Shown in pieces: positions 34,934 to 60,700 of a stretch of DNA of 64,000 nucleotides. The stretch lies in the NCBI RefSeq assembly GCF_031769215.1, contig NW_026781861.1, positions 744,001-808,000 on the forward strand, given 5' to 3'. Position 1 is the first letter of the stretch; every line of letters starts with the position of its first letter. The translations under genes were made by a program, and so were the position numbers. Source of the DNA: Ylistrum balloti. Taxonomy: Eukaryota. The notes beneath the pieces are model-generated. The model searched no databases. It saw only the letters and a program-made list of their open reading frames with translations, and was not told where the DNA came from.

Positions 34934-35499
34934 TATGAGGATACACAGTGAACGTGTATGTTATGTTCACGGATCTGTGACTTGAAAATATCGGATTAAA
35001 GAATACAATACCGCTCGTGATTTTCGGTCAGTGTGATAAACTGGTACTCTTTGTTGTGAGTGATTCACTTCTTCAAACACTCCTATAGCCCCGACAATGT
35101 CTAAATATGGTGTTGTAAGTATGTACATATGGAACAGATTAAATCGCTTTATTAGATGAAATTTTTTCTCGGTGTGACAAAAAAGTTCGGGATATAGACC
35201 GTAACCAACAGAGATGGAAAAAAGAAATCGTTCTCCGTCATCCATAAAGCGTGAGTGTCGGCGTCATTTAAAATTCAATACTTACAGATATGTTTGTCAA
35301 ATCTACAAACTGTCATATTAATATCTGAGAATAAACAGAGCGCAACGAAATGAAAACAGGGCTGCTCTGTGGATAATTTTCTAACAAGTATAGTAGATAA
35401 CTAACGCAGAAATTTTAATTAACATATAAACGCCTTCAGAATTCATGCCATTAAAGTTTGTAGAAACATTTTTGTTTTAAGCATGCTTTATGGACATCA

Positions 35500-36250
35500 C
35501 AACCTTTCCCAGTAGGACATCAGCAGAAATTGTTTCAACTACAGGTACATGAAGACGAAAAAGATCTAGGAATGATAGTAGATAGCAATTTAAATTTCAG
35601 ACAACACATACAGACAGCAGTAAATAAAACAAACAAAATATTAGGCACAATAAGAAAAACTTATGCATACTTGGATGAATGATCATTCTGTTTACTATAT
35701 AAAGCATTAAGAAGACCAAATTTGGAGTATGGAGCTAGTATTTGGAACCCGCATAATATATAGGATATTGATTTATTAGAGAATGTACAAAGAAGAACAA
35801 CAAAACTTTTACCAGGAATGAAAGAATTAACATATGTTGAGAGAATGATAAGACTAGAATTACCATCATTAAAGTACAGACGGGACCATGGGGACATGAT
35901 TGAGGTTTTCAAGATCTTAAGAGGATTGTATGACAACGAAGGATCTGCAAATTTAATCAGCAGAGTTCAGAACAAAAGAACAAGAGGGAATTCTTACGGC
36001 CTGGAAAAAGGAAGTTTTCTTTCTCTCACAGGGTGGTAAAGAATTGGAACTCTCTACCAGATTATATAGTACAAGCGCCAACTTTGAACTAATTTGAAAA
36101 ACAGGCTTGATATATATTGGAAAAGTGCGGAGAGAACATATAACATCTTTATTCCAACCAGAAGTGACAACATTGAACCAATGGATTGTGACAAGCTTTC
36201 AGATCTGAACGTAAAGGCATAAGGGCTACGTTCAGTTACTACTTATCTAT
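35500..36250 (+). mobile_element. 5'-truncated, decayed CR1-clade LINE (C-terminal RT region + 3' UTR)
   Basis: Translates as EKDLGMIVDSNLNFRQHI...NKILGTIRKTY..*..LLYKALRRPNLEYGASIWNP..*..LLENVQRRTTKLLPGMKELTYVERMIRLELPSLKYRRDHGDMIEVFKIL...TRGNS, the typical CR1 ORF2 C-terminus, with in-frame stops. It ends in a hairpin (CTGAACGTA 36205-36213 / TACGTTCAG 36227-36235) and a short TTAC-type tail. Confidence 0.92.
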
Positions 36251-37899: not shown

Positions 37900-38680
37900 G
37901 ACGTAACCCATGGTATCCCGCAGAAATAGCTGCATATGGGTCTTTAGGGATGACCACAGTCCTAGAAGGTCCTGTAACTGTTGCAACCCTAGAAATGGCA
38001 ATCATGTCCGTGATATTGTTATGAGTGACAGGCGAGTTACAGAGAGAGAGATATAGTCAGCACAGTTGGGATTTCACAGGGAAGATCACATTCCATTTTT
38101 ACGGAAGATCTTGTAATAAAAAAGTTCAGCCCGTGGTGTACCAAAGCTTCTAACAGTTGATCAGAAGCACACCAGACGGACTCTGTCGCTTGCTAATATG
38201 AACGTTTTACAAGCAGATCCTGCTTACTTTCTACAGAAGTTTGTGACTATGGATGAAACATGGGTCCATCATTTCACTCCAGAGGCCAAACAACATTCTA
38301 AACAATGGAAGCATCCTGGCTCATCCCAACCAAAAAAGGCCGGTACCATCAACTGGAATACTCATTACCTCGATTTTCTGAGATGCTGATGCTATTCTGA
38401 TGGTAGATCATCAGCGAAAGGGGCAAACAATCAATGGTACATATCATGCATTTCTTCTAAGACAGTTAAGAGAAAAAATTGAGCTCAAGCTCCGCGGAAA
38501 ACTCCGTAAAGGTATGTTGTTCCGCCAGGACAATGCCCTTGTTCACATGTCTGTCATTGCCGTGGCTACCATTAACGATTGTAGTTTTGCATTGACTGAT
38601 CATCTGCCTTATTCGCCTAATCTCGCTCCATCAGACTTTCGTTTATTTCCAAAACTGGAAAGGGCCATATTCTTTAGTTT
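37900..38680 (+). mobile_element. Decayed mariner (Tc1/mariner, DD34D-type) transposase fragment
   Basis: Motifs in broken frames: DIVMSDRRVTERE, VPKLLT, FVTMDETWVHHF..E.KQHSKQW, GQTING.YH..LL.QLRE, QDNALVH, HLPYSPNLAPSDFRLFPKL. It has frameshifts and an internal deletion, and I could not identify TIRs. Confidence 0.92.
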
Positions 38681-40597: not shown

Positions 40598-43500
40598 ATG
40601 GGTGGTTCATTCAGCACAGAAATTCCGGGCGGTGGAACAGAGGGCTACCATGTTCTCAGAGTAAGTGACATGAACGGACTGACTTCTGAAGTGAGAAAAT
40701 GTTGGGAAACATGACATTGTTTGACCGATCTACCTACTACTTCAAGTTGATTGGCGTTGAATACTTTGTTTACCGCATTTGAAGTGAAGAGATTTGAAGA
40801 AATAATAATGTGAAGCATTAGCTAAATCGTGTATTCATACGTGATCTCAATAGCCTAGATAATACCAGTCTATAAGAGATGTGCGTGTAAGCCAAATTCA
40901 CTATGTGTACGAATCTGGCTGAAGTTGTCCCAAGATGTCCACCTGATCCTGACGTTACACGTGTGAGCATTGCGCAGACAAGTGACCGACATCTGTGCCC
41001 TTGTTTCAACGTCAGCGCATAGTTTAAACTATATTATATGCTTAAGTAATTTATGCAAACATATGACAGCCTCGGGAAAGAAGAAACTAATTATGTTGAT
41101 AGTTCTAATGTTCGCTCGGTTTTCTTTAACGATACTCAAAATGTCATAATGATCAGCTGTTTATTTAACTGATATCTTTTTGCCGAATCTATTATATCTT
41201 TTAAAGAAAAAGAAATATTCATAGTTAGTGAAGTTTTGATAACATTTCTTTTACAATATTATATACCACAAGTTCTTTCATTTTCTATAAGAAAGATCTT
41301 GCTTGAAACTTCTTGAATGAATAGTTTAGGTAAATTGACAGAAGTCATAAACTGATGCTAGCCAAAAGATGGCAGCCATTTTCATGTTGAGGCAGATCCT
41401 CTACATTGTTGAAATTTATCACAGCAGAATGGTCAAATCTGTCATCGTAATGTTGAATGGAAATTATGATTATCTTTGTGACATATTTCAAATTACTTTC
41501 CTTTGCTTCAAGTGAGTAAAGACAGTTACAGTACTATAAGTGATATTCTCATTCTAGGGATCAAATTCAATCCTGATATCACAACTAAATGAAATCCTAT
41601 GTCACATGGTACCGTCTCCTAACTTAATTGTATACAGAATGATACATAGATCCCAATCTCTATTTGAAAGAAATGTGCTGACAAGTTAAGATGAGTCTCG
41701 CATAATGATTACTTGTTGACTTTCCACAATGTCTGTTGTTTTAAGGGTCTACTTTAGTGAACAGATACCTGCTCCATCCACAGACTGACATAACAAATTT
41801 CAGTCATGTACACTAGGAATCAATTAAACAAAAAATTGACATATAATCCACGCAGGGAGACATTTTAAGTCTTTTCCTATGCATTGACCTACATCCTGAC
41901 CTGAATCTGTCGACAACGTGACTGGAAAGAAGGCAGCTAGAGCTTCTGTGTCATCAATGGTTTAAACATTTTTGTTGAATTTTATTTATCTTGCGATCAT
42001 TACGTCAATTTTAGGCTCAAATTATTTTAGAATGGGGATAGTATACTTGTTTTTTAATATATACTGGAAATTAGATCGTTCATTTGGTTGTTTTAACACA
42101 CAACTTGTGATAAAACCACAATTCATTGTCTAATCTCCAGTATAGCATAAAAAACAAGCACACTGTTCCCTAAATAGATAATGACAAACAGTAATTGCAC
42201 ACTGTGACATCCTGTAGCAAGATGGACATTCACACATTGCTTATTTCTCTGCACAATCGAGTCCTTTAATGAAATTCTACCACTCTGACGACAGTCATTG
42301 ACTCTGATGACCCTGTAGTCGGCAATACACATATAGATCAAATCTTCGAACAACACTGAAAATCAAGCACATTTTATTGTATTTTCTTGCTCAAGGTATA
42401 CATTTTTAGTCTTCACGGATTCATTTGAGATATTTTTAGATTGTTTAGGCATTATCAGTCAATGACTTCAACAGAAAGTAAACTGATTATAGCTAAAAAA
42501 AAAAAAAGAAGATTTTTCTCAGTATCAGACCAATTTCAGATTTGAGACAGAGTTTTCCCTTTTACTAAATATTATTTCTTTTCATTTTAAGGTGCAAGAG
42601 GGCTCCCCAGGGCACAAAGCAGGATTGGAGGCATTCTTCGATTTTATTGTAGCGATAGGACACACACGGCTGGTAGGTTAATTGTATTGTGACAATATAG
42701 AACTGGTATTTCTGGCAAGTTTCTGTTATTGTATAGGTAGAACACTCATGTCTAGTAGATTTAATTCATAGCTGACATGTAATTTAATTATGCGGAGTGT
42801 TCTGAAATCAATAATTTTCTTACACAATGATAGAACTCCTCCAGGAAGTCATTAAAGTTATAAAGGATCGAGGAGAGGTAATTTGTCAACAACTAGTTGT
42901 AGCATTACCTAGCTAGTATAATAAGAATTTCATGTTATGCAGCTTGCACTTCTTATTATCGGGTAAAATTAGCTCTGCTTTCTATTCATATTTTAATTGA
43001 CATTATAAAACATTAAATAAGACATATAATTTTTACTTCATTTTATATTTTATCGTGAAGATATTAATTCCTAAAATATAATATGATATACTTTAAAGTT
43101 TGTAATCAAAGATATTTTCTCTTACAGAATCAGGATAATGATACTCTTAAAGATCTTCTGAAGGCAAACATAGAGAAACCAGTGAAAATGGCAGTTTATA
43201 GTAGTAAAACACAGTCTGTTCGTGAGGTGACCATTCTACCCAGTCATAACTGGGGTGGTCAAGGACTGCTGGGTGTAAGCATTAGGTGAGAGGTATACTC
43301 AAACTGTTCCTGTATTGGTCACTGTCTGTCTGGTAAAGATAAATCTTCATGTTGTTTTCAGTTCATTTTCTTAAATGAGATTATTAAGTTTCTAAACATA
43401 ATACATGTACTTGTGTAAATCCTAGAAGTCTCGTGATCTGATTTCTGGCAGAGGCATTAACACAGAGAATAATTTTGTTACATTTATATAGGAAACTGAT

Positions 43501-46500
43501 GGTTCACTTTACATCTAACAGACATTTGTCGGGCTACTTGGTTGATGGTCAGCATTTCAGAAATCAATTCCCAAATCTTAAAAAGTTTTCGGAAGTCAAA
43601 AACATATACTGTTGAGAATCTAATGAATGCCATTTTAATGATTCTCTTGGCTTGATATCCCATTCTTCAACTTGAAACATTTTTGACATCTTGATAATCA
43701 ATAACTGTATGAAATGAAGTGCTACCATGTTTAATTGAAAAAGACAATAGAGGGTTTTTTTTCACTGGTGTTTTGTTTGTTTCTGATTTATTGCAAAACA
43801 GCCAATTCATGCCTTATGAGACATTCTCTCAAATTTACAATATCGATGTGAATGATAAAGATTATTATTATAATGGTTATTAATGCCATACCAAGAAACT
43901 AAAGGGCAATTCTACAGAATGTTATTGTAAATGTGCTTATAAGTCAATACAATTTAATCAATTAACTTCATACACAAGTTAAAGTCACTTGATATTCTTA
44001 CCAAATTTTCTTCAGAAAAACCAATATATAGCCAAAAACAACGGCAAGAAATATTCAATATTGACATCAGTGAAGATACTTCAGGGCTCTCGCACCCCAT
44101 TTTGGGACTGGGACCCGTGGCCCTTAGAATTGGTTAAAAATAACGCTGTTTTCCTTAGAACTGGGAAAACTTGGGGGTCTAAATTGGGAAGAAAAGATGC
44201 TATTTTGCATTGGGAATGGGGCCGATATTTGGCAGATCGAGAGCCCTGTACTTTATGTATAGTGGAATAGTTATGGAACACTGATATGGAATTACCTTCT
44301 TATGAGATACTCTATACTGTGTTAATTAAAAAAATGTAGCTCCCACATTTGTTTAAAACTGAAAATATATCGACATCGTAATAAAAAGATATGGGATGTA
44401 AATATACCACTACAAAGGACAAGAAAAGATAAACAGATCCAAAGCAAATAGAATTTTATTAAAACAACTTTTTGATTAAGAGTTAAAAGATTATTGATGA
44501 ATGGGTTGCCATGTATGGTACATGTATGTCAGATATAAAAAGAATGCATCCTTATGGTACATCTTAATAAGGTAGACCTATTAATAAAATCAGTCTAATG
44601 GTTATTGAATATTGTGTTCTAGAGCATCAGTTTAGTTTAGATTTATGTGATTATGAAGAAAAGACTTAAATAAGAAAGAAATATTTAATAAAATTTTAGC
44701 CAAAGCCACTAATCGGACAACAGTGTAGATTAATCCATTATTCCAGATGTTGCAACCATGCCGAATAGAATATTACATTTTGTAAATTTAGACAATTTTT
44801 TTTTAACATAACTTTGAGGAAAGAATTGTTTGAAATTCTGTTCATAACCACATCTTACTTTTTGCAGGTTTTGTTCCTTTGAAGGGGCTAATGAAAATGT
44901 CTGGCATGTGCTGGTAAGTCAAAATATGGAGTATATCTGAATTAAGATATTCAGTTCATTGTTTGGTTTTTCAAATTTGATCAACTCTAACCACATCCAC
45001 AATAAAAATGTTGTATTGTAATATAGTAAATATAATATCAATTACAGAATACATAAGCCTTATGTCAGAGTTAGTTTCCAGTTCCTTATCAACAGTTTCT
45101 GTCTTGTGGTAGAAATCTGCATATCTTTTTCTGTGCTTTATTTTATTATTTACAAGATAAAAGCCAGTCTATGATTTCTTGAACAGAACTTAAATGTATT
45201 GCAAGCAAATACTTCTTCAGATTTAAGTTATTTACAATCCTTTTTGTTAAACTAATGTCCGAAAAGCTGAATTTCAAAATTCAACAATTCTGTGAGGTAA
45301 ACAAGTCAGGCAAGAAGGCAATTTCATCAACCATTTTGTGAAAGTTGTGTCTTAATACTTTTTGAACAGGAGGTAAAACCAAATTCTCCAGCAGACCTGG
45401 CTGGTCTCAAGTCTAACACTGATTACATCATCGGGGCTGACTCTGTGCTGCATGAGGTACAAATATGACTATTCGTTTTCTACTAGAAATAATGTACTTA
45501 ATGCAAGGTCTTTGTAAAAAGAGTTTGTAAAATGTAGAAATGTGTTGTCGCAATAAACAGGTTTTTGGACTTTTTAAATCTAATCTATTTTCCTTTTCTA
45601 ACAATTTGTTGTAACTGTTGGCAAGATTAACTTATGTAGTAAGTAAAATGTTTAATGTATCTAAGGACAGGGTATTTGCTATACTTTTCATGTATTATAC
45701 AAATATCTCAGTTTTAAATTCGTCTTAAATAATGAATATCTAGCACTTTTACATATCAAGCTGTTACAAATAATATCATTTCAATGTTTCCATGAGAAGT
45801 TTTAATGAGATACTCAACTGATGAAATATCTTTTTCAGTCCGAGGATTTGTTTACACTGATAGACTCTCATGAAGGTAAACCACTGCGTTTGTACATCTA
45901 CAACACAGAATCAGACTCGTGTCGGGAGGTCACGATCACACCTAATGGAGCTTGGGGAGGAGATGGAAGGTACATTCATAATCGTTATGTGACTTGTCTA
46001 ATATCAAAATCACAGATAATTGATCAGGTGTATAATATATAGACTGTAAAATATAAAATTCTGTATAAAAACAAAACTGTTTCTCATTCTAGACATAAAT
46101 TACTGAAAAAAATACTTCACCTATACATTGATTTTTGGGACTCAGATATCTGAATCCAGGACTTTTGATTTTCCTATTGGACTCGCTGAAATTTGGAGAA
46201 CCCACTTTTGGAAATGACTCAAAAAATTGTACAAAATTTATTGCTATATCCAGAGAGAGACTTTTGATTTTCCTATGGGACTCGCTGAAATTTGGAGAAC
46301 CCACTTTTGGAAATGACTAAAAAAATTGTACAAAATTTATTGCTATATCCAGAGAGAGAGAGATCACAGAACATTTATTTTCTGAAGCCAAATTACATTA
46401 TGATTGTATTTCTAATCTTTATTAGTACGTTTGGTGAGGATGGAAGGTAAGAATATTTCTATTGGTACAAGGAGAACAATACTTTATTAATTTGTCACAT

Positions 46501-49500
46501 TGTTGCTTGATTATCCCCAACTTTCTAGTACGCAATAAAACTACACTGTCAGATTCTGTTTGATTATTCGGATGTTTATTTAAATTTGAGAAAAAAACTT
46601 AATCCAAACCAAAAATGACGATCAGAGCTTCCAGAACAAAACTAATGGCGAAAGGTTTGGAAAACTTGATTTATCTCTCCTCCCCTGTCTTCTCTGCCAA
46701 CATGTTTTCCTGTCAGGTCCGGTATACAACAAATACTAACAATTATTTTAAACTTCACTTGTTAGTGCTTTCGTAGCATTCACCACAAATGGCTTCCCTC
46801 CCTTCCTCCCCACCCTGTAAGGTGGTGTACATCTTGGTGAGCTTTATAATCTAATGAAAATTTGCTCTAAATCCAAGGCTTTGAATAATAAACATTGTAA
46901 AATGACAGGGGTAACCTACATTGAAATAGGTTGTGTACATGTATCTCTGCTAGCCCCTTGGTGGGGTCACCCCCTAAAAAAATGATAGGTGGACAGATGT
47001 GATCCAAAATCCAAAGATTTAGACAAGGGCATTATATAATAACAGGATGGTTTCGCTTTTTCCCTGCCCTTGATAAATATATGATCTGTAAAATGTAAAG
47101 TTGAAATCATTAGTAGGTGTATGGCAAGTCAGTGTTCTAGTATGCATTTACTTTATGGTTACAATAACATTGCAATCCACTCCTACCAAATTTTTGTTAA
47201 TGACTTGATGTTTCTATATAGTGTAAAGGTCATTCTATTTCCAACTATTCCTGAGATGGAATGCACTAGATTTATAGGGAGAATTGACTGGCTTTGAATA
47301 GTATACTAAATTTATAGGCCATCTAGTATATTTACCAGTATTGTGATTAGTCAAAGATGGCTATCAACTAGAAAAAAAGTTTCCATTTGTAATTGATAAT
47401 TTCCATTTATACAGAGAAGGTTTTGATAGCACAATTTAAAACTTACATTCAGGTATGTGTGCTCACAAATCAAACTGTTTAAGTACACCCTATTTCAAAT
47501 TCACCCTTAAATGTGAAAGATAAACTTCAAATATTGATAATATTTGATTTCAAACTTAGAGTAATCTTTTATTTTCGTATTGTTGAGAAAAAGGTGAAAC
47601 AGACAGAAGATTTTCAAGAAATAATACACAACAGCAGGACCTTACAATTTTGAATATTGTTTAGGAAAATATTCATCTATCATTCATATATAATATAAGA
47701 AAACAAATTGTTTAAGTCTCGGTGAGCTAGTATATATAGAATACCTATTAGAAATGTACATTCTTGTCCTATTAAATTATGATTAGTGTATCTAATTTAT
47801 TGTAAGATATTTGCAGGACTTCTTACTGTCCTGTTGTCACAAGATTAACAGCATGAGGTGAACAGGGGTTCAGGTCACCATATTCACCATGGTGATAGAC
47901 TATAGTCACATTTAGATCGTAAATAATACAAGAAGTCCAGCATGAGGACTTATATGATGCTGTAATTTGTAGGAAGTATAGGTCAGATATTTTGTCTTTT
48001 GATACCATCTCAAAACCCCTATGAAATGTCACCATGATGTACTGTATTGCACTTGTATTTCAGAACAGTTACTTTTTTGTCTTGATTGATGTCCGAGAAA
48101 TAGATTCAATCTGAATTACAATATGTGTCCCGAAATTGAGATGGTCATGTCAGGTTTTCATTTACTGTTGTTCGAAATGAAAACGATAATAATAATGATT
48201 AAAAAAATGTTAGATTTATTTCAACCCAAACCAGCACCATGATGTGGTTGTTTATGCAGGGGAGATAACTGCCTTTGAGAGTTAGGTACAGGAAACAGGA
48301 ATTCAAATGGGTATATATATATATATAGTGTTTATCATCTTGGAGGCTAACAAGGGTCCTATTTCTAACAGACATTATTATATATTCATGGAATTTCATG
48401 TGGTGCTGTGATGTTGATGCATTTTATATACTGAAAATTTCTCAACTATTGGATTTTCCAAACTACATGTAACTGAAGAAGGTCCCTTCATTGATTAACC
48501 AAAATATAGGAGGAAGACTAGTCCTTAGATTAGTTGCATAATTCATCATTATGTGTGTTGCACACATTAAAATATTTATACTTTGCAAATTTGTCCTCAT
48601 GATTTACAACTCTAGAGAATTTCAGATCCTTCAGGTCCTGTGTTGATATCAGTATTCAGTGCTGTCCATGTTAGATACATTGATAACTAGGGCCCATTCT
48701 GACTTTGTCACATCTCGTTCATCTGTACAATCACTCCTTTCATTTGATGTCATGTTTCTCATCCTTGCTATGAATTTCCTGAAACTTCAAAATGAATGTT
48801 GATACAAGTTGAAGAACTTCAATGTGATGTTTGCTAAAGATTTTTGGCTTTTCTGTTTTAGTTGTTTACTGGAATATGTTAACATGATTTTTCATTAATT
48901 TTCTGTTTGATTTGCAGTGTAAACAAGCAAAATGCTGACCATAAGTATTCCTCTGATTTCTGTTTGGGTGTAAAAAGAAAATATTTGATTGTGAACTCTT
49001 ACACCTTTTCAGTCTGGGATGTGGTATTGGATATGGATATTTACACAGGATACCAAAGAGACAGTTCCCTTCAAATGTTTCTCCAGAGAAACTAGCAACC
49101 TCAGTTCAAACACCGCAGAAGTCTCCAGATGGATTTGCAGAGGTAAGCTGAAAGCTAAAATATCATAGATAAAGTAAAATAAATAAAAATGTTACTATGT
49201 ATCAGCACCTGTGAAATCTTGTTTTAAGACTAAATAATGAAGAAGAAATGTCTTGGTTTTTCCTTTGATATGGCTATTTGTTAATTACATCAAGGCATCT
49301 ATTGCTGCTCTGATAAAGTGATATATAAGGCGTTGAATTGTTGAAATCCTGAATTATGACCTAATATGAGTTCATAACTATTAAATGTTAAGTTTTTTCC
49401 CTTAATTCTTTATTCTTGAGTTTATTTTTGGTAACATAAAAATATTTCATGTGTTGCAGGTTTCTCTTGGTAATTCTCCGCAAGGGCTGCCTACCAGTAT

Positions 49501-52108
49501 GGCTCAAATGTCTATAAATACAGGTAAGTTTTTCATCTTGTCATTTCGGAGAAAAGGGAGGGGATCAAACCTTCTGACTTTTAAACATCATGCATGTACT
49601 GTATTTATTGGTATCATTTGCTTGAGATTTCTCTTTGTTTCTATTCATGGTAATTAAAGATTGTACAAAACTAAATGTTCAGCAATCATTTTAGTGTGAA
49701 ACAAATCTAAGTAAGTACATTATATATGCCTGTAGACATGCGTAAAAAATTCAATCCCTGTGAACACATCCAAAATTGCTGAATTCACCGACTAAAGTAT
49801 ATAAACTTAATTTGACATAATCAAATTTTAAAGCATAATCACTTTTTGACACACAGAGGCATTGAATTAAGTGTCATACACCTTAAGCACAAAAGGCACT
49901 AAAATATGATTACTGAAAAAATAGGTATATTTAAAATGTACTATTTATAGATTTGATATCGCAATCAATTCCAATATGGTAACACTGTCTTTGTCTTCCC
50001 TAAATCCCCGCAAAACTAAGGTAAAAACAAAACTGTATGATGATTTTGCAGTAATTTCCATTAATATCTGCCATTTTAATTGGATAAGGTTCCCCGACCA
50101 TACCGGTGATTCCATCTGCTATTAGTGGCGCTGGACATGGACAGCCCCTTCAACCTTCACCAATGCCAAACTTTTCTTCACCTCTCACAGGTGTCAGTTG
50201 TAAGTTTTATGTGTATGTATTGTCTGATGGTGAAAACAACCTGTCAGAGGTTGGGGCTTTACTTCCTTCATGAAGTAGAGTTGGAAATTCTCATAAAAAA
50301 AAAGTGTCTGCGGTTCTTAGAATTGATATATCTATATGAAAAATTCATCACTTCTCATTTCTAAGTCTAGTTACCTACTCCTCATCAAAACTACAAATCT
50401 GCATCATGGAAAACTGCTTCTTAGTAAGATTTCATTCAAAGTTAAAAAAAAATAACCCTTCTCTCTGATGACTGTTGAGGCCTGTAGGCTTCTTGTTTTT
50501 TTTTAGTGAAATCTTTTAGCTTTAACGGAAAGCAATATTTGTATTATAATTATATTAAATTCATCTACTGTAAAATAAAGTTGACATGATTTGACCATCA
50601 TTATTCAAATGTTCCAGTACCGGCAAGCACAATGCCCAACCTACAAGGGATGCCTAGCCTGGCAGGCATGCCCAACTTATCTTCATTACCTCCTTTGACT
50701 ATGCCGATGTCACTGCCGGGGATGCAGCCCGGGGCACTTCCAGCAATGTCATCACTACCTGTCAGCATGACTCCGTCCCTGCCAGGTAAGATTTAAGAAC
50801 ATTATACTGAAAAATTAATCTGGAAATTTTAGTTATTACCATATTTTCTGGGTTATAAACTGCACCAATACATAAGCCACAGAACCAACTTTTCACAATA
50901 TTCTTTTTTCAATTTGATCTACTCTATATATTAGCTTACATTGGAATGTAAGCATCATCCTTTTTTATGATGTGGCAGCCATTGTTTTGATCAAAGTTCA
51001 TTAATATAACAGACAACAGATGGCAATTTTTCAAGATCATCAGTGAAACATTTAATATAAGTTTGCAAACGAGTAGTACAGATAATCCTTTATTTTATTG
51101 ATGTGATTCAAAAACGTAAAATAGCAATGTCATACTCATTTGGCTTGGGAGCCCTCAAAGATTGTCTTTGCACAGTTATATAGTCTGACGTTCAAATGTT
51201 TACTTCGCAAGATCGCCATCAGTATCTGTGCTGTTAAATGTTAGTGGAGGTCTTTGCTTGACAAAATTATGATAGGCCCATATTATTTCTTGTAAGTTAC
51301 ACTAAGTCATTTTTATCACAAACAAGCATGGCAGTTCTAGAATTTGACCCATGACCTATCGATCCCAGGATGTAAACTTCATTGGTTTTTTTTGTTTGTT
51401 TTTCTTTCTGCCAATGTATTTTTTTTTTTTTTTTTTTGCACTTATAAGCTACTCTGGTATGTAAGCTGTACGCCCGACCATCGAAAAAAAAATGTGGCTT
51501 ATAACCAGGAATACAGTAATCTTAACCTAACCTAGTTCAGTACGTTTATCATATATGGTCTCTAAGCTAATGGTTTTTATCTTCAATTGGGCCAGTATAT
51601 TTATCAAAGAGAAGTGAATTTATCTGTTAACTGTTCTACTTTAGTTAGATGATTATTTGATGACTTCATAGATAAAACTTTCCGTTGACACAAGGCAACA
51701 TTTTGCACATGACATCTGTAGATTCCTTTGGTTGGTTGAGGTGAATTCCACATCAGATTGTATAATGAGTATAATGTATTATTTTATCTAGGTATGACAT
51801 CCAGTACATCAGTGCTGCCCCCTGGGATGGGTAGTGCTGCACCTCCAGGTGTTGTAATTCCTCCCATAGCTGGTCTACCAACGTCCATGCCAGCCTCCCT
51901 CCCCAACCTCCCTACAAACTTTACTATCCCCACTCAAGCAGTGGGAGATTTGCCACAGATGCCCCAGAGTGTGGCTGGCACTCTTCCTCTACAGACAGGT
52001 GCTGCGGGTGACCTGAGTACAGCTACAGCAAGCCCCTCTGCGTCAGCAGTGTCATCAGTTGTACCCCCAGTGGCGGAATCATCAGAAACGGTCAATGCTG
52101 CATCCTAG
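40598..52108 (+). CDS. GORASP2: Golgi reassembly-stacking protein (GRASP55/65 family), 11 coding exons, ~448-451 aa
   Basis: Exons: 40598-40660, 42592-42672, 43128-43285, 44868-44913, 45370-45456, 45839-45969, 49013-49142, 49460-49523, 50089-50190 (or -50199), 50618-50785, 51792-52108. All are GT-AG and in phase (1347 nt with the first donor). Sequence: [41 protein letters not shown]..., [47 protein letters not shown], then a Ser/Pro-rich tail. Gly2 is the myristoylation site. This is likely the single invertebrate GRASP, so the GORASP2 versus GORASP1 label is nominal. Confidence 0.96.
44082..44248. mobile_element. 167-bp MITE with 11-bp perfect TIRs and an apparent 5-bp TSD
   Basis: CAGGGCTCTCG (44082-44092) and CGAGAGCCCTG (44238-44248), with TACTT directly on both sides. 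Lies in GORASP intron 3. Confidence 0.8.
46160..46356. repeat. Tandem duplication, 2 x ~99 bp, in GORASP intron 6
   Basis: gacttttgattttcctat...ttgctatatccagagaga starts at 46160 and again at 46259, with only a few differences. Confidence 0.93.
46426..46446 (+). CDS. GORASP2: Candidate 21-nt in-frame alternative micro-exon of GORASP (adds STFGEDG)
   Basis: tgtatttctaatctttattag|TACGTTTGGTGAGGATGGAAG|gtaaga has a CTAAT branch-like motif, a pyrimidine tract, AG and a consensus donor. Phase is 2/2, matching the flanking exons. Confidence 0.6.
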
Positions 52109-57768: not shown

Positions 57769-60700
57769 TCATTTATATATGTCTAAAATCACGAGAAAAA
57801 TCAATTGAACATAGGTATGTTAATATATTTTACTTTCGTAGATATCAATTTAATCTCAATATTATTACAAAGTATACTTTAAGTTCTAAATTCACTATAG
57901 ATTACAAACATAAACAAAGGCACAAAAGGGTTGTCAGGTTTACCTGATTCGTTGAAGCACAAGACACGTGGTTGATTATCACAGTAGCTAACCACACCCC
58001 AACCGTCAAAAGGACAGTCTGCCAGGTTGGCCTCGGTACCAGAACATCCTAAATTGGCCATCCATATGGGTTCATTTGGTACACCCTGCCATCCCTCCAG
58101 TACCTTTCCACTACTGGAATTTAACAATCCTAACTCATTAGCATTAAGTCCCATACCAAACAATATATATAAAGTTTGCAATTTTTGTTTTTCTTATGTT
58201 ATATATCGTTCATTAATGACACATTCGATTCTAATGATCAAATAACCATTTTTTGAATTTATGAAATTTACGGTCAAGAGGTCAAGGAGTCAAAAGATAA
58301 GTTGGGGTCAGTATTTCATGTAAATATGTATCGATACATATCAGGTAAATTTGGCAAAAAGAGAAATGGAACATTGCTTAAACGTTATATGATTTTATTA
58401 AATCTGTGGGGCTGAGATTAAAAGGCGGGGCCAAATAGGAGAAAATGGGATGGGGTCGTTTTAGAAAATCTTCTGTACACCTACAGATAGCAGAGGGTAA
58501 TATCACATTTAATTATAATTATGAACAAGTCCTTTTCTTAGAATTGATGAAATTAATGGCCTTGAGGTCAAAGGGTCAAACTGACTTTTGGGTCTTGTCT
58601 TCCCATTATTGACTTGATTCCTGAGTCATAACCTCGGGGAAGTTATGATTTCAATCCAATCACCATATAACATTGCTTGAAATCAGGGAATAAAATCAAA
58701 GGGAATGTTAGAACTGATCCAGTGTTTTGGTCCCAACCCGCGTCTGGGATTTAATTCTTCAGCCTAATCCGGACATAGTCGTGACTTTGAAATGTTTGAG
58801 ATACCACAACTATAATCATGCAGATTGGGCAGAAAGAACTGTCTTAATCCCGTGGTGGTCTTAAGAGAAGTTTCACTGTTAACGACAAATTAAATGTCTT
58901 ACATGTTCAATAAATATGTTTCACCTGTAATGAAGCATTCTGCAAGCGACTGTAGCATCACTGTCGTTAAAGGTGTTCTTTGCTGAACAAACAGTTCCCC
59001 AGTGTCCACCGTAGTATATCTCCAGTCGCCCAGCAGAACTGTTGAGTTTGTCCACTAGGCGAATATCTACTGTAGAAACTGCTCAAAGAAAACGTATGAA
59101 AGTTACCTGTCAAATAATAATGTGTGTACGGCTTTCTTCCCTTTATACAACAATTGTTGTTGTCCGATAATAGATACAAGAGGCTCTATAGCCTATCATA
59201 TTTACTCAGATATGTCAGTCTGAAAACCAAAAACAATTGTAGAAAAAATCACCGTTTAATCAAAACCGGTGCCTGTACCAAATTTCAATTTTCTTTAGGA
59301 ATTAGAAAAAAAATCCGCTATTGGATCTAGTCCCTGAATTGTCTCTCCTTCACCAAACAATGCTTCTGGCTAAATGTCCTGTGTCTCCTGAAGAAGGATT
59401 GCAAAGAAATTGCTCTTCATTATATGCACTATTTGGTTCAGAACCCATCTTTAATAGCAAATTGGTTTCCTCTCTCCGACGATGCTTCCGATCAAATCTG
59501 ATCAACACAATTTCGTTCTAACAGCAACATCGTAAAGTGATTTCTCTATTTCTACTATTGATCCTCGCCCTCCAGTCTCAAGGGTCCGATTCCGACCAAA
59601 TTTACACCAAATTCTGTCATTCTTCTATAGAAGATAAATTTCAAAGAATTTGCTACATACACCTCCATTTGGGGAGACAAGCTTTTGAGACTCTATATTT
59701 TAATTTTTGGTTATGTCACCAGATCTTTCATGAAGTTATTATAAACACAGCCCGTCATTTACTTACATAATATTGTCACCTTTTAATCTAGCTACACTGA
59801 CGGAGAGGAGTCATACTAATGTCCAGGACCTCAGGATCAGTCTTTGCTTTAACATAATATTTTCGGCATACTGAACATGGAGAGCGACTGAATTTGAGTA
59901 GTTAAGTTTAAACATACCTGTGGTGTTATAACAGAACACATTAGCAGGATAGTTTTCACAGCTGTGAACTTGACCCCATCCGTGAAATGAACAACTAGCC
60001 AAACTTTCTTCCGTACCGTTGCATTGAACTCCTTCCATCCATACAGGTTCTGTTAGATTGCCATAACGATTGGTTCGAAAGACTCGACGACCGTTACTAA
60101 ATATAATGAATATAAAGATACCGACTTTAAAATGATGATGTATTGTATCAGATTCACATTTAATGGAATCTTTGATATCTATGTATATTCGTTGTTATCA
60201 TTTGTGGTAGTTCTTCATCCTTGTAACATGCATCCCTCCATCATCCATAACTCTAGAGGTTACGCTCACCATCGCTCTCTCACTACTGGGACATGTCATT
60301 GTAAAATTGGAAAATTGAACCGTTCCACGTGCAAAACCTTGCGGATAAGACGAGAAGACTTATTTGATAATTTGATGTACATCAAGCGAATCTCGAGGTC
60401 ACATAACGGTATAATGTTTTGACTTTGAAGCTGGGTGTAACTCATTTATGATCTTCAAAAGGTCATATCAGTCTGTGATTGGTCAGTTTTTCCCTTCTCT
60501 TGAAACAAGCTATTGACCAATAAAATTAATTCGCTTATCCCTTTCAGTTTTGCCATAAAATAATCCAGAGGTGCAGAGAGCGAAAGTGATTGTAATCCCC
60601 GGAGTATCGGGGATGGCATCCTTCAGGGAGTCCATTGTTATTAGTCGGCTAATATAAACTTTTGATGCATGTTGTGCACGACATAGAAAACGACATCTAC

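What the first reader, a model, noticed from the sequence alone, without database searches (positions are those of the whole stretch)
46426..46446. Hidden 21-nt micro-exon that would insert 7 aa next to the GRASP trans-tethering ligand
Seen: a 21-nt segment deep in GORASP intron 6 has a branch-like CTAAT, a pyrimidine tract, AG and a consensus AAG|gtaaga donor, in the same phase (2/2) as its neighbours. Inclusion changes [20 protein letters not shown] to [27 protein letters not shown]. Its 3' half (GAGGATGGAAG) mimics the end of exon 6 (GGAGATGGAAG), suggesting origin by partial exon duplication. Known: in mammalian GRASPs the IGYGYL strand is the internal PDZ ligand for trans-oligomerisation, and PLK1 phosphorylation of the Ser in G(E/D)GSLG just before it inhibits tethering in mitosis. 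Inference: splicing could act as a switch on Golgi stacking or tethering by lengthening this loop and adding Ser/Thr plus acidic residues. It could be tissue-specific, for example neural, as many micro-exons are.
Basis: partly seen in the sequence, partly recalled or inferred. Interest (0 to 1): 0.72.

Follow-up and report, generated by a model that had tools for sequence, protein, structure and literature searches.

The report
Conserved hidden micro-exon in scallop GRASP
A 21-base stretch in an intron of a scallop Golgi-stacking gene is very likely a real, alternatively used mini-exon: two other scallops keep it and list it as a protein variant with 7 extra amino acids beside the site that controls Golgi membrane tethering.

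Summary
Window 46426-46446 is a 21-nt, frame-preserving AG...GT segment in the 3043-nt intron between the two PDZ2 exons of the single GRASP (GORASP) gene. That gene encodes Ylistrum balloti XP_060086008.1 exactly.

Splice-like signals alone are at chance level: 7 comparable pseudo-exons lie in the same intron. Comparison with other scallops decides it.
- **RefSeq isoforms:** Pecten maximus and Argopecten irradians each have an isoform pair differing by exactly 7 aa at this junction (WGGDG-STVEEDG-SLGCG and WGGDG-STFGEEG-SLGCG). The window predicts STFGEDG.
- **Orthologous exons:** both use the same AG/GTAAGA boundaries.
- **Conservation:** in all three pairwise intron comparisons, the micro-exon with about 30 nt upstream and 45 nt downstream is by far the best match (E 4e-28 to 4e-30). 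It is as conserved as the flanking exons, and the rest of the intron barely aligns.
- **Distribution:** no other of 361 GRASP proteins has the insert. Oyster and mussel introns lack it, and Pinctada has no intron there.

The exon is unannotated in Ylistrum and I found no paper on it. AlphaFold models the insert as a low-confidence loop just before the internal PDZ-ligand strand. No RNA run was available, so the proposed tethering or phospho-switch role and any tissue specificity remain untested.

The parts
40598..52108 (+). Coding span of the single GRASP (GORASP2-like) gene, from the ATG of MGGSFS to the stop codon. It encodes XP_060086008.1 of Ylistrum balloti (P0224, 451 aa).
   Evidence: tblastn of P0224 on the window: the PDZ exons and the last exon match at 100% identity, and the remaining hits dip only where the alignment runs into intron sequence at exon ends. 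PF04495 is found only here in the genome.
45839..45969 (+). Exon 6, the PDZ2 core. It ends ...WGGDG plus AG, the first two bases of the split Ser codon.
   Evidence: It aligns to GRASP65 chain positions 145-187 (4kfv_A), 72.5 bits for that stretch.
46395..46425 (+). Conserved upstream intronic flank: probable branch point (TGAT, A at 46403; CTAAT at 46412-46416), a short pyrimidine tract and the acceptor TTATTAG.
   Evidence: Nearly invariant in three scallop genera and part of the top intron match.
46426..46446 (+). 21-nt cassette micro-exon, phase 2 to phase 2. It inserts S-TFGEDG (7 aa) between Gly188 and the Ser/Leu of SLGCG.
   Evidence: Orthologues at L002:6646-6666 and L003:11048-11068 encode the RefSeq X1 inserts STVEEDG and STFGEEG. 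Five of 7 substitutions fall at third codon positions (read).
46447..46491 (+). Donor GTAAGA and the conserved downstream intronic flank (U-rich ATATTTCTAT, then GGTA..GGAGAACAA).
   Evidence: The donor scores 10.4 bits on a crude position-weight matrix, the best in the intron.
47844..47954 (+). Second, weaker conserved intronic element. It is single-copy in the genome and carries two GCATG cores (47851 and 47940). It is a candidate splicing-regulatory element.
   Evidence: blastn E 1e-10 against Pecten and 0.019 against Argopecten; alignment; GCATG counts; single copy.
49013..49142 (+). Exon 7. It starts with T, the third base of the split Ser codon, then encodes [14 protein letters not shown]..., the internal PDZ-ligand strand.

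Best explanation
Window 46426-46446 is a genuine, evolutionarily conserved cassette micro-exon of the scallop GRASP (GORASP2-like) gene. It is unannotated in Ylistrum balloti.

**Splicing (shown by orthology, not by RNA here):** the exon is spliced 45969>46426 and 46446>49013 and is alternative. Skipping gives the universal ...[16 protein letters not shown]... form. Inclusion gives ...[23 protein letters not shown]....

**Effect on the protein (modelled):** inclusion lengthens by 7 residues the loop that leads into the PDZ2 strand carrying the internal ligand. It adds one Thr and two acidic residues. It duplicates the (D/E)-G-S context, so the Ser before LGCG keeps an acidic residue at -2. That Ser is the homologue of GRASP65 Ser189, the PLK1 site.

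**Function (inferred):** the longer, more acidic and flexible loop changes how well the PDZ2 surface projection fits the PDZ1 pocket of a partner molecule, or changes its phospho-regulation. This would tune GRASP self-tethering in the tissues that include the exon.

**Regulation (inferred):** the strongly conserved intron flanks and a conserved downstream element with GCAUG cores suggest regulated inclusion.

**Origin (inferred):** within the scallop lineage, probably from a copy of the exon 6 tail and its donor.
For: - **Isoform pairs:** RefSeq pairs differ by exactly +7 aa at this junction in Pecten maximus (462 vs 455 aa) and Argopecten irradians (463 vs 456 aa).
- **Orthologous exons:** both have a 21-nt exon with the same ...AATCTTTATTAG| and |GTAAGAA boundaries, and these encode exactly those inserts.
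- **Conservation (blastn):** the island 46395-46491 is the top intron-versus-intron match in all three species pairs (E 4e-28 to 4e-30, 81-89% identity).
- **Conservation (3-way identity):** it is 0.54-0.80 there, against 0.78-0.85 in exons 6 and 7 and 0-0.3 in the rest of the intron.
- **Coding-type constraint:** length, frame and lack of stops are kept in all three. Five of 7 substitutions are at third codon positions (read; binomial p about 0.045, my arithmetic).
- **Single copy:** the region is single-copy, not a repeat.
- **Gene identity:** GRASP family.
- **Models:** the fold is kept with the insert (TM 0.83-0.92 to GRASP55 crystal structures). With the insert, residues 188-192 have pLDDT below 50 and the following strand drops to about 70. 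Without it, the same region scores 86-93.
- **Background:** role of Ser189 and Y198 in GRASP65, PMC4726779.
- **Origin:** similarity to the exon 6 tail.
Against: - No RNA evidence could be obtained for this species. No RNA run holds the locus, and the only run is DNA of another individual.
- The Ylistrum RefSeq has only the skipping isoform.
- The relatives' X1 isoforms are automatic models whose read support I could not inspect.
- The acceptor is weak: -0.85 on my crude scale, top 11% of AGs in the intron, with a short pyrimidine tract.
- The low pLDDT of the insert is expected when only 2 of 66 aligned sequences carry it, so the models say little about function.
- Nothing here tests tethering, phosphorylation or tissue specificity.
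- The insert is absent from all non-scallop GRASPs examined, so the mammalian mechanism may not transfer.
Confidence: 0.82

Rival explanations
1. The exon is really spliced, but the +7-aa isoform does not act on GRASP self-tethering. The insert could instead alter another property: the PDZ2 binding groove for golgin or cargo C-termini (SLGC sits where the carboxylate-binding loop would be), protein stability, or a scallop-specific partner.
For: The insert sits directly before SLGC as well as before the ligand strand. Solved GRASP55 and GRASP65 structures with golgin or JAM peptides show that these PDZ grooves bind other ligands (titles). Conservation shows selection but not which function.
Against: The position coincides exactly with the Ser189 homologue, whose modification blocks tethering in GRASP65 (PMC4726779). 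No partner data exist for molluscs.
Confidence: 0.12
2. The conserved island is a non-coding element, such as an intronic enhancer, a small RNA or a splicing silencer for the flanking exons. It only looks like an exon, and the RefSeq X1 isoforms reflect rare noisy splicing or annotation transfer.
For: The intron flanks are more conserved than the 21 nt themselves. I could not see the reads behind the RefSeq models. The A. irradians annotation could in principle have borrowed protein evidence from P. maximus.
Against: The frame, the 21-nt length, the AG and the GTAAGA are all kept, and substitutions fall mainly at third positions. There is no Rfam match and no stable RNA fold (z 0.02). Highly conserved flanks are typical of regulated alternative exons (established knowledge).
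Confidence: 0.05
3. A chance pseudo-exon: a random AG..GT pair in an AT-rich intron.
For: Seven comparable frame-preserving candidates lie in the same intron. About 0.07 equally strong ones are expected per intron of this size (my arithmetic). One rival candidate, 46822-46836, is deleted in another individual.
Against: Orthologous conservation across three genera, when the rest of the intron is essentially unalignable, plus annotated isoforms.
Confidence: 0.01

Closest known systems
RefSeq isoform X1 of GORASP2-like in Pecten maximus (XP_033728855.1) and Argopecten irradians (XP_069108360.1)
   Same: Orthologous 21-nt cassette exon at the same intron position, with the same phase and splice-site sequences. 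The inserts are STVEEDG and STFGEEG against the predicted STFGEDG.
   Different: These are automatic annotations with no published description found. In Ylistrum balloti only the skipping isoform is annotated. The peptides differ at 1 to 2 of 7 residues.
PLK1 phospho-switch at Ser189 of mammalian GRASP65 (internal PDZ ligand centred on Y198)
   Same: The same structural site. The split Ser codon at the exon 6/7 junction is the homologue of Ser189, directly before [11 protein letters not shown]. Both changes add negative charge to the loop before the ligand (for background).
   Different: The mammalian switch is a reversible post-translational change in mitosis. This one is a co-transcriptional 7-aa insertion, restricted to scallops, and its effect is untested.
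Animal cassette micro-exons (3-27 nt), for example the SRRM4/nSR100-dependent neural programme
   Same: Length of 21 nt, frame-preserving, highly conserved flanking intron sequence, and a position in a surface loop of a protein-interaction domain (features known from the literature, my own knowledge; conservation shown).
   Different: No UGC motif lies in the 40 nt upstream of the acceptor (read). The exon is lineage-restricted, not ancient. Tissue specificity is unknown. The conserved downstream GCAUG cores hint at Rbfox-type control.

Membership tests
GRASP55/65 (GORASP) family | Two tandem GRASP-type PDZ-like domains (Pfam PF04495) | tested here: met
   Exons 5, 6 and 7 hit PF04495. The genome scan finds the PDZ1 exon at 43131-43283 and the PDZ2 exon at 45830-45967, and nowhere else.
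GRASP55/65 (GORASP) family | N-terminal Met-Gly (myristoylation glycine) and the conserved [11 protein letters not shown] strand | tested here: met
   [13 protein letters not shown] at 40598. [14 protein letters not shown] in exon 7.
GRASP55/65 (GORASP) family | GRASP-domain fold | tested here: met
   The AF2 model of the A. irradians orthologue matches GRASP55 structures 3rle, 4edj and 4kfw, TM 0.83-0.92, E 1e-32. Over exons 1-7 that orthologue differs from the window's protein at only three residues, apart from the insert.
Alternatively spliced cassette micro-exon (27 nt or less) | Length 3-27 nt, canonical AG/GT boundaries, frame-preserving, no stop | tested here: met
   21 nt, TTATTAG| and |GTAAGA, phase 2 to 2, peptide S-TFGEDG-S.
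Alternatively spliced cassette micro-exon (27 nt or less) | Orthologous conservation of the exon, its splice sites and the flanking intron | tested here: met
   Three scallop genera.
Alternatively spliced cassette micro-exon (27 nt or less) | Transcripts with and without the exon | tested here: inconclusive
   Both isoforms are annotated in P. maximus and A. irradians. No RNA run was available for the window's species and only the skipping form is annotated there.
SRRM4/eMIC-type neural micro-exon | UGC-containing enhancer close upstream of the 3' splice site | tested here: not met
   No TGC lies in the 40 nt before 46426 (sequence).
SRRM4/eMIC-type neural micro-exon | Neural-specific inclusion | not testable with these tools
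   No tissue RNA-seq was reachable.
Rbfox-regulated alternative exon | Conserved (U)GCAUG in the downstream intron | tested here: inconclusive
   GCATG cores at 47851 and 47940 lie in the second conserved block. Counts are 2, 7 and 5 per intron against about 1 to 1.5 expected. There is no full TGCATG in Ylistrum.

The most novel reading that the evidence does not exclude
Scallops evolved a lineage-specific splicing switch on Golgi architecture. A micro-exon born from a copy of the exon 6 tail inserts an acidic, Ser/Thr-bearing heptapeptide exactly at the GRASP Ser189-equivalent. The result is an isoform with constitutively altered, probably weakened, PDZ2-to-PDZ1 trans-tethering or changed polo-kinase control. 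Inclusion would be tissue-regulated, for example Rbfox-type control in muscle or neurons, through the conserved intron elements.
Probability: 0.25. Interest if true: 0.7.

Novelty: new member of a known kind. Interest (0 to 1): 0.52.

Why it matters
GRASP proteins tether Golgi cisternae through an internal PDZ ligand, and in mammals mitotic phosphorylation of one nearby serine controls that tethering. Here evolution placed a 7-residue alternative insert at that same serine and kept it, with its intron flanks, across scallop genera. This is a natural experiment on how loop length and charge before the ligand affect GRASP oligomerisation, and it can be tested directly with recombinant domains. 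It also corrects the Ylistrum balloti annotation, which lacks an isoform. Finally, it shows that a micro-exon predicted from raw sequence alone can be validated by comparative genomics when no RNA data are to hand.

Tried and rejected
- **RNA evidence:** The look-up of sequencing runs found no RNA run. It returned only one DNA run of another individual. Laying that run showed no variants in 46386-46513. At about 0.9% divergence this is not significant: about 0.9 differences are expected in the island.
- **Splice-site statistics:** these use my own approximate consensus matrix, not MaxEntScan. They show that the signature alone is not significant.
- **Wider similarity to exon 6:** local alignment of the flanks of exon 6 against the flanks of the micro-exon gives no extended similarity. 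25 of 291 random chunks score as well.
- **Repeat or transposon origin:** rejected. The region is single-copy.
- **RNA gene:** no Rfam hit and no stable fold.
- **More scallop species:** a word search with the exon 6 read-through ORF found no further pectinid fragments, so only three scallop genera could be compared.
- **Other isoform pairs:** oysters, mussels, Dreissena, abalone, octopus, Littorina, Babylonia, Physella and amphioxus isoforms differ elsewhere, not at this junction.
- **Literature:** no paper links GORASP to a micro-exon.
- **Joined model:** Exons were searched singly by reference, and the natural A. irradians X1 and X2 proteins served as proxies for modelling.
- **Complex prediction:** no complex-prediction job was sent. 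One job could not compare the two isoforms.
Full report
**1. The observation**

- Window 46426-46446 reads TACGTTTGGTGAGGATGGAAG. It follows ...TTTCTAATCTTTATTAG and is followed by GTAAGA.
- The upstream exon is 45839-45969 and ends ...GGAGATGGAAG|GTACAT.
- The downstream exon starts at 49013 after TTTTCAG. I place its end at 49142, with the donor GT at 49143.
- The intron is 3043 nt (45970-49012).
- Both real exons and the candidate keep phase 2. Inclusion reads AG|T ACG TTT GGT GAG GAT GGA AG|T, turning WGGDG-SLGCG into WGGDG-STFGEDG-SLGCG.

**2. The gene**

- Exon 6 and exon 7 match Pfam GRASP55_65 (PF04495) at profile positions 80-121 and 123-137. The skipping form therefore matches the family profile without a gap.
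- Exon 6 aligns to GRASP65 and GRASP55 crystal-structure chains, ending at ...AWGGEG. The split Ser codon at the junction is thus the homologue of GRASP65 Ser189.
- PF04495 occurs only at this locus in the 648-Mb genome.
- tblastn shows that the window encodes XP_060086008.1, 'Golgi reassembly-stacking protein 2-like' of the scallop Ylistrum balloti (P0224, 451 aa). Its coding exons begin at 40598, 42592, 43128, 44866, 45370, 45839 and 49013, followed by the Ser/Pro-rich C-terminal exons.

**3. Is the splice-like signature beyond chance? No.**

I used a crude position-weight scan built from approximate consensus frequencies that I know, not a trained model.
- The candidate donor scores 10.4 bits, the best in the intron. 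There are 11 donors that good on the + strand of the 64-kb window.
- The acceptor scores -0.85, which puts it in the top 11% of AGs in the intron.
- The real flanking exons have weaker sites than the candidate's donor.
- With thresholds as weak as the real exons, 7 frame-preserving, stop-free AG..GT segments of 60 nt or less lie in this intron.
- 14% of strong donors in the window have a suitable in-frame acceptor upstream.
- One rival candidate, 46822-46836, is removed by a 15-nt deletion in another individual.

An invariant TGAT 22 nt upstream fits better.

**4. Resemblance to the exon 6 tail**

- 16 of 23 nt are identical, and the 11-mer GATGGAAGGTA occurs only at these two places on either strand of the window.
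- With the shared AAG|GTA anchor fixed, 10 of the 17 upstream nt match. The mean is 4.3 over 72 such anchors in the window and fetched loci, and only 4 anchors reach 10. I take these to be the exon 6 tails and the micro-exon itself, but the script did not list them.
- The similarity does not extend into the flanks.
- At protein level, AWGGDGS and TFGEDGS align (aromatic-G-x-D-G-S).

A partial duplication is plausible. Common constraint is an alternative: both tails must supply (D/E)-G and the AG of the split Ser codon.

**5. RNA evidence**

It found only Logan contigs of a DNA run from another individual. Those contigs cover the region at about 0.9% divergence with no difference in 46386-46513. 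This fits the reading but is not significant.

**6. Protein evidence from relatives, which decides the case**

- A search with the exon 6 peptide returned 150 representative GRASP proteins and fragments. Every one that spans the junction has the canonical spacing, apart from two atypical sequences (P0037, P0109), neither with a 7-aa insert.
- Many genomic fragments read 'WGGEGR...', that is, read-through into the intron. The intron position and phase are therefore ancient.
- Word searches with full-length homologues gave named proteins. The three closest are scallops.
- The cluster look-up then showed isoform pairs differing by exactly 7 residues: Pecten maximus X1 462 aa against X2 455 aa, and Argopecten irradians X1 463 aa against X2 456 aa.
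- The alignment puts the difference exactly at the predicted site: WGGDG-STVEEDG-SLGCG and WGGDG-STFGEEG-SLGCG.
- Ylistrum has one annotated isoform, without the insert.

**7. Genomic evidence from relatives**

I fetched both orthologous loci.
- Each has a 21-nt exon in the same intron: L002:6646-6666 (TACGGTTGAAGAAGATGGCAG) and L003:11048-11068 (TACATTTGGTGAGGAGGGAAG).
- Both are preceded by AATCTTTATTAG and followed by GTAAGAA, and both encode exactly the RefSeq inserts.
- In a three-way alignment of exon 6 + intron + exon 7, identity is 0.78-0.85 in the exons and 0-0.3 over nearly all of the intron. It peaks at 0.54-0.80 at 46399-46479 (detail).
- In pairwise blastn of the introns, the island 46395-46491 is the top hit in all three pairs (E 6e-28, 4e-30 and 4e-28; 81-89% identity over 95-124 nt).
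- The next best hit is a single weaker element at 47844-47954.
- Within the 21 nt there are 7 substitutions. Five are at third codon positions, with no indel and no stop. The intron flanks are more conserved than the exon, as is usual for regulated alternative exons.
- The island is single-copy, has no Rfam match and no unusual RNA fold.

**8. Distribution**

- Of 361 fetched GRASP proteins that span the junction, 356 have the canonical spacing and only the two scallop X1 isoforms have a 7-aa insert. The other three are a 2-residue variant (P0037) and two proteins in which the motif match failed (P0109, P0341).
- Isoforms of oysters, mussels, Dreissena, abalone, octopus, Littorina, Babylonia, Physella and amphioxus differ elsewhere.
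- Pinctada imbricata has no intron at this site, because exons 6 and 7 are fused.
- The orthologous introns of Crassostrea virginica (about 382 nt) and Mytilus galloprovincialis (about 385 nt) contain nothing like the island. Their only match to it is their own exon 6 tail.

On present sampling the micro-exon is an innovation of scallops.

**9. Structure**

I did not build the joined Ylistrum isoform. The natural A. irradians isoforms served as proxies. Apart from the insert, their GRASP domain differs from the window's at three residues, all in the C-terminal part of exon 7, and the insert differs from the predicted one by D to E.
- **With the insert:** mean pLDDT is 83.7 and residues 188-192 are below 50. 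Blocks 181-210 average 66, 71 and 70. The ligand strand shrinks to residues 200-203.
- **Without the insert:** mean pLDDT is 86.5. Blocks 181-200 average 93 and 86, and the strand spans 192-197.
- **Fold:** the model with the insert still matches GRASP55 crystal structures (TM 0.83-0.92).

The insert is therefore modelled as a flexible loop extension right before [11 protein letters not shown] and does not disrupt PDZ2. The low confidence partly reflects that only 2 of 66 aligned sequences carry the insert.

**10. How it most likely works**

*Shown:* a conserved, frame-preserving 21-nt exon with conserved splice sites and flanks, listed as an alternative isoform in two relatives.

*Inferred:*
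- In GRASP65, PLK1 phosphorylation or an Asp substitution of Ser189 shifts the surface projection around Y198, so that it no longer fits the PDZ1 groove, and blocks tethering (PMC4726779).
- The insert adds 7 residues, two or three of them acidic, plus a Ser-Thr pair at exactly this position. It also recreates (D/E)-G-S-L before the ligand.
- The most likely effect is a change in the geometry or flexibility of the ligand projection, and hence in GRASP self-tethering, and/or in its kinase control.
- In all three species the Thr is followed by an acidic residue at +3, a casein-kinase-2-like context. This is my reading and is not tested.

The conserved flanks and the second conserved element, with its GCATG cores, suggest regulated inclusion, perhaps of the Rbfox type. 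The upstream flank lacks the UGC motif of SRRM4-type neural micro-exons.

**11. Comparison with what is known, and novelty**

- The kind of feature is well known: a cassette micro-exon in a surface loop of an interaction domain.
- This particular exon appears only as automatic RefSeq isoforms in two scallops.
- It is missing from the Ylistrum annotation.
- No paper in the library links GORASP to a micro-exon.

I class it as a new member of a known kind.

**12. Verdict**

| Claim | Probability |
|---|---|
| A real alternative micro-exon exists here | about 0.9 |
| It modulates tethering or phospho-control | about 0.3-0.4 |
| It arose by duplication of the exon 6 tail | about 0.5 |

Interest is moderate. 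The prediction was validated at a functionally critical site, but it is lineage-restricted and has no expression or functional data yet.

Noticed in passing
window 47844-47954: A second conserved, single-copy element deep in the same intron. It contains CAGCATGAGGTG and a second CAGCATGAGG (two GCATG cores). GCATG is over-represented in the orthologous introns of Pecten (7 against about 1 expected) and Argopecten (5 against about 0.9). It may be an Rbfox-type splicing enhancer. CAG|CATGAG|GTGAAC could formally also be a 6-nt in-frame exon, but no isoform shows it.
   Followed up: partly
window 46160-46357: A 99-nt unit duplicated in tandem (98% identical) just upstream of the micro-exon island. 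It does not align with the other two scallops' introns, and the contigs of the other individual break there.
   Followed up: partly
window 46821-46836: A 15-nt deletion polymorphism in another individual. It removes a rival in-frame pseudo-exon (46822-46836, RWCTSC).
   Followed up: partly
L004:6401-6682 (Pinctada imbricata): The pearl oyster GRASP gene has lost the intron between the exon 6 and exon 7 equivalents. Many genomic fragments in the protein search read 'WGGEGR...', that is, they run through into the intron at this same position and phase.
   Followed up: partly
exon 6 tail against micro-exon tail: window 45962-45969 and 46439-46446; L002:6406-6413 and 6659-6666: The synonymous third base of the last Gly codon co-varies between the exon 6 tail and the micro-exon tail: GGA/GGA in Ylistrum and GGC/GGC in Pecten. 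Argopecten is discordant (GGC/GGA). This could be coincidence, gene conversion, or a shared constraint on donor context.
   Followed up: no
window 35464-36036 and 38120-38386 (+ strand); L003:5823-7952: Transposon remnants upstream of the GRASP gene: open frames that look like a reverse-transcriptase and a mariner-type transposase. A PiggyBac-like DDE_Tnp_1_7 gene sits inside an intron of the Argopecten orthologue.
   Followed up: no
window 57882-60194 (- strand): Open frames with motifs that look like scavenger-receptor cysteine-rich domains (for example GCSGTEANLADCPFDGWG), downstream of the GRASP gene. They probably belong to a neighbouring gene on the opposite strand.
   Followed up: no
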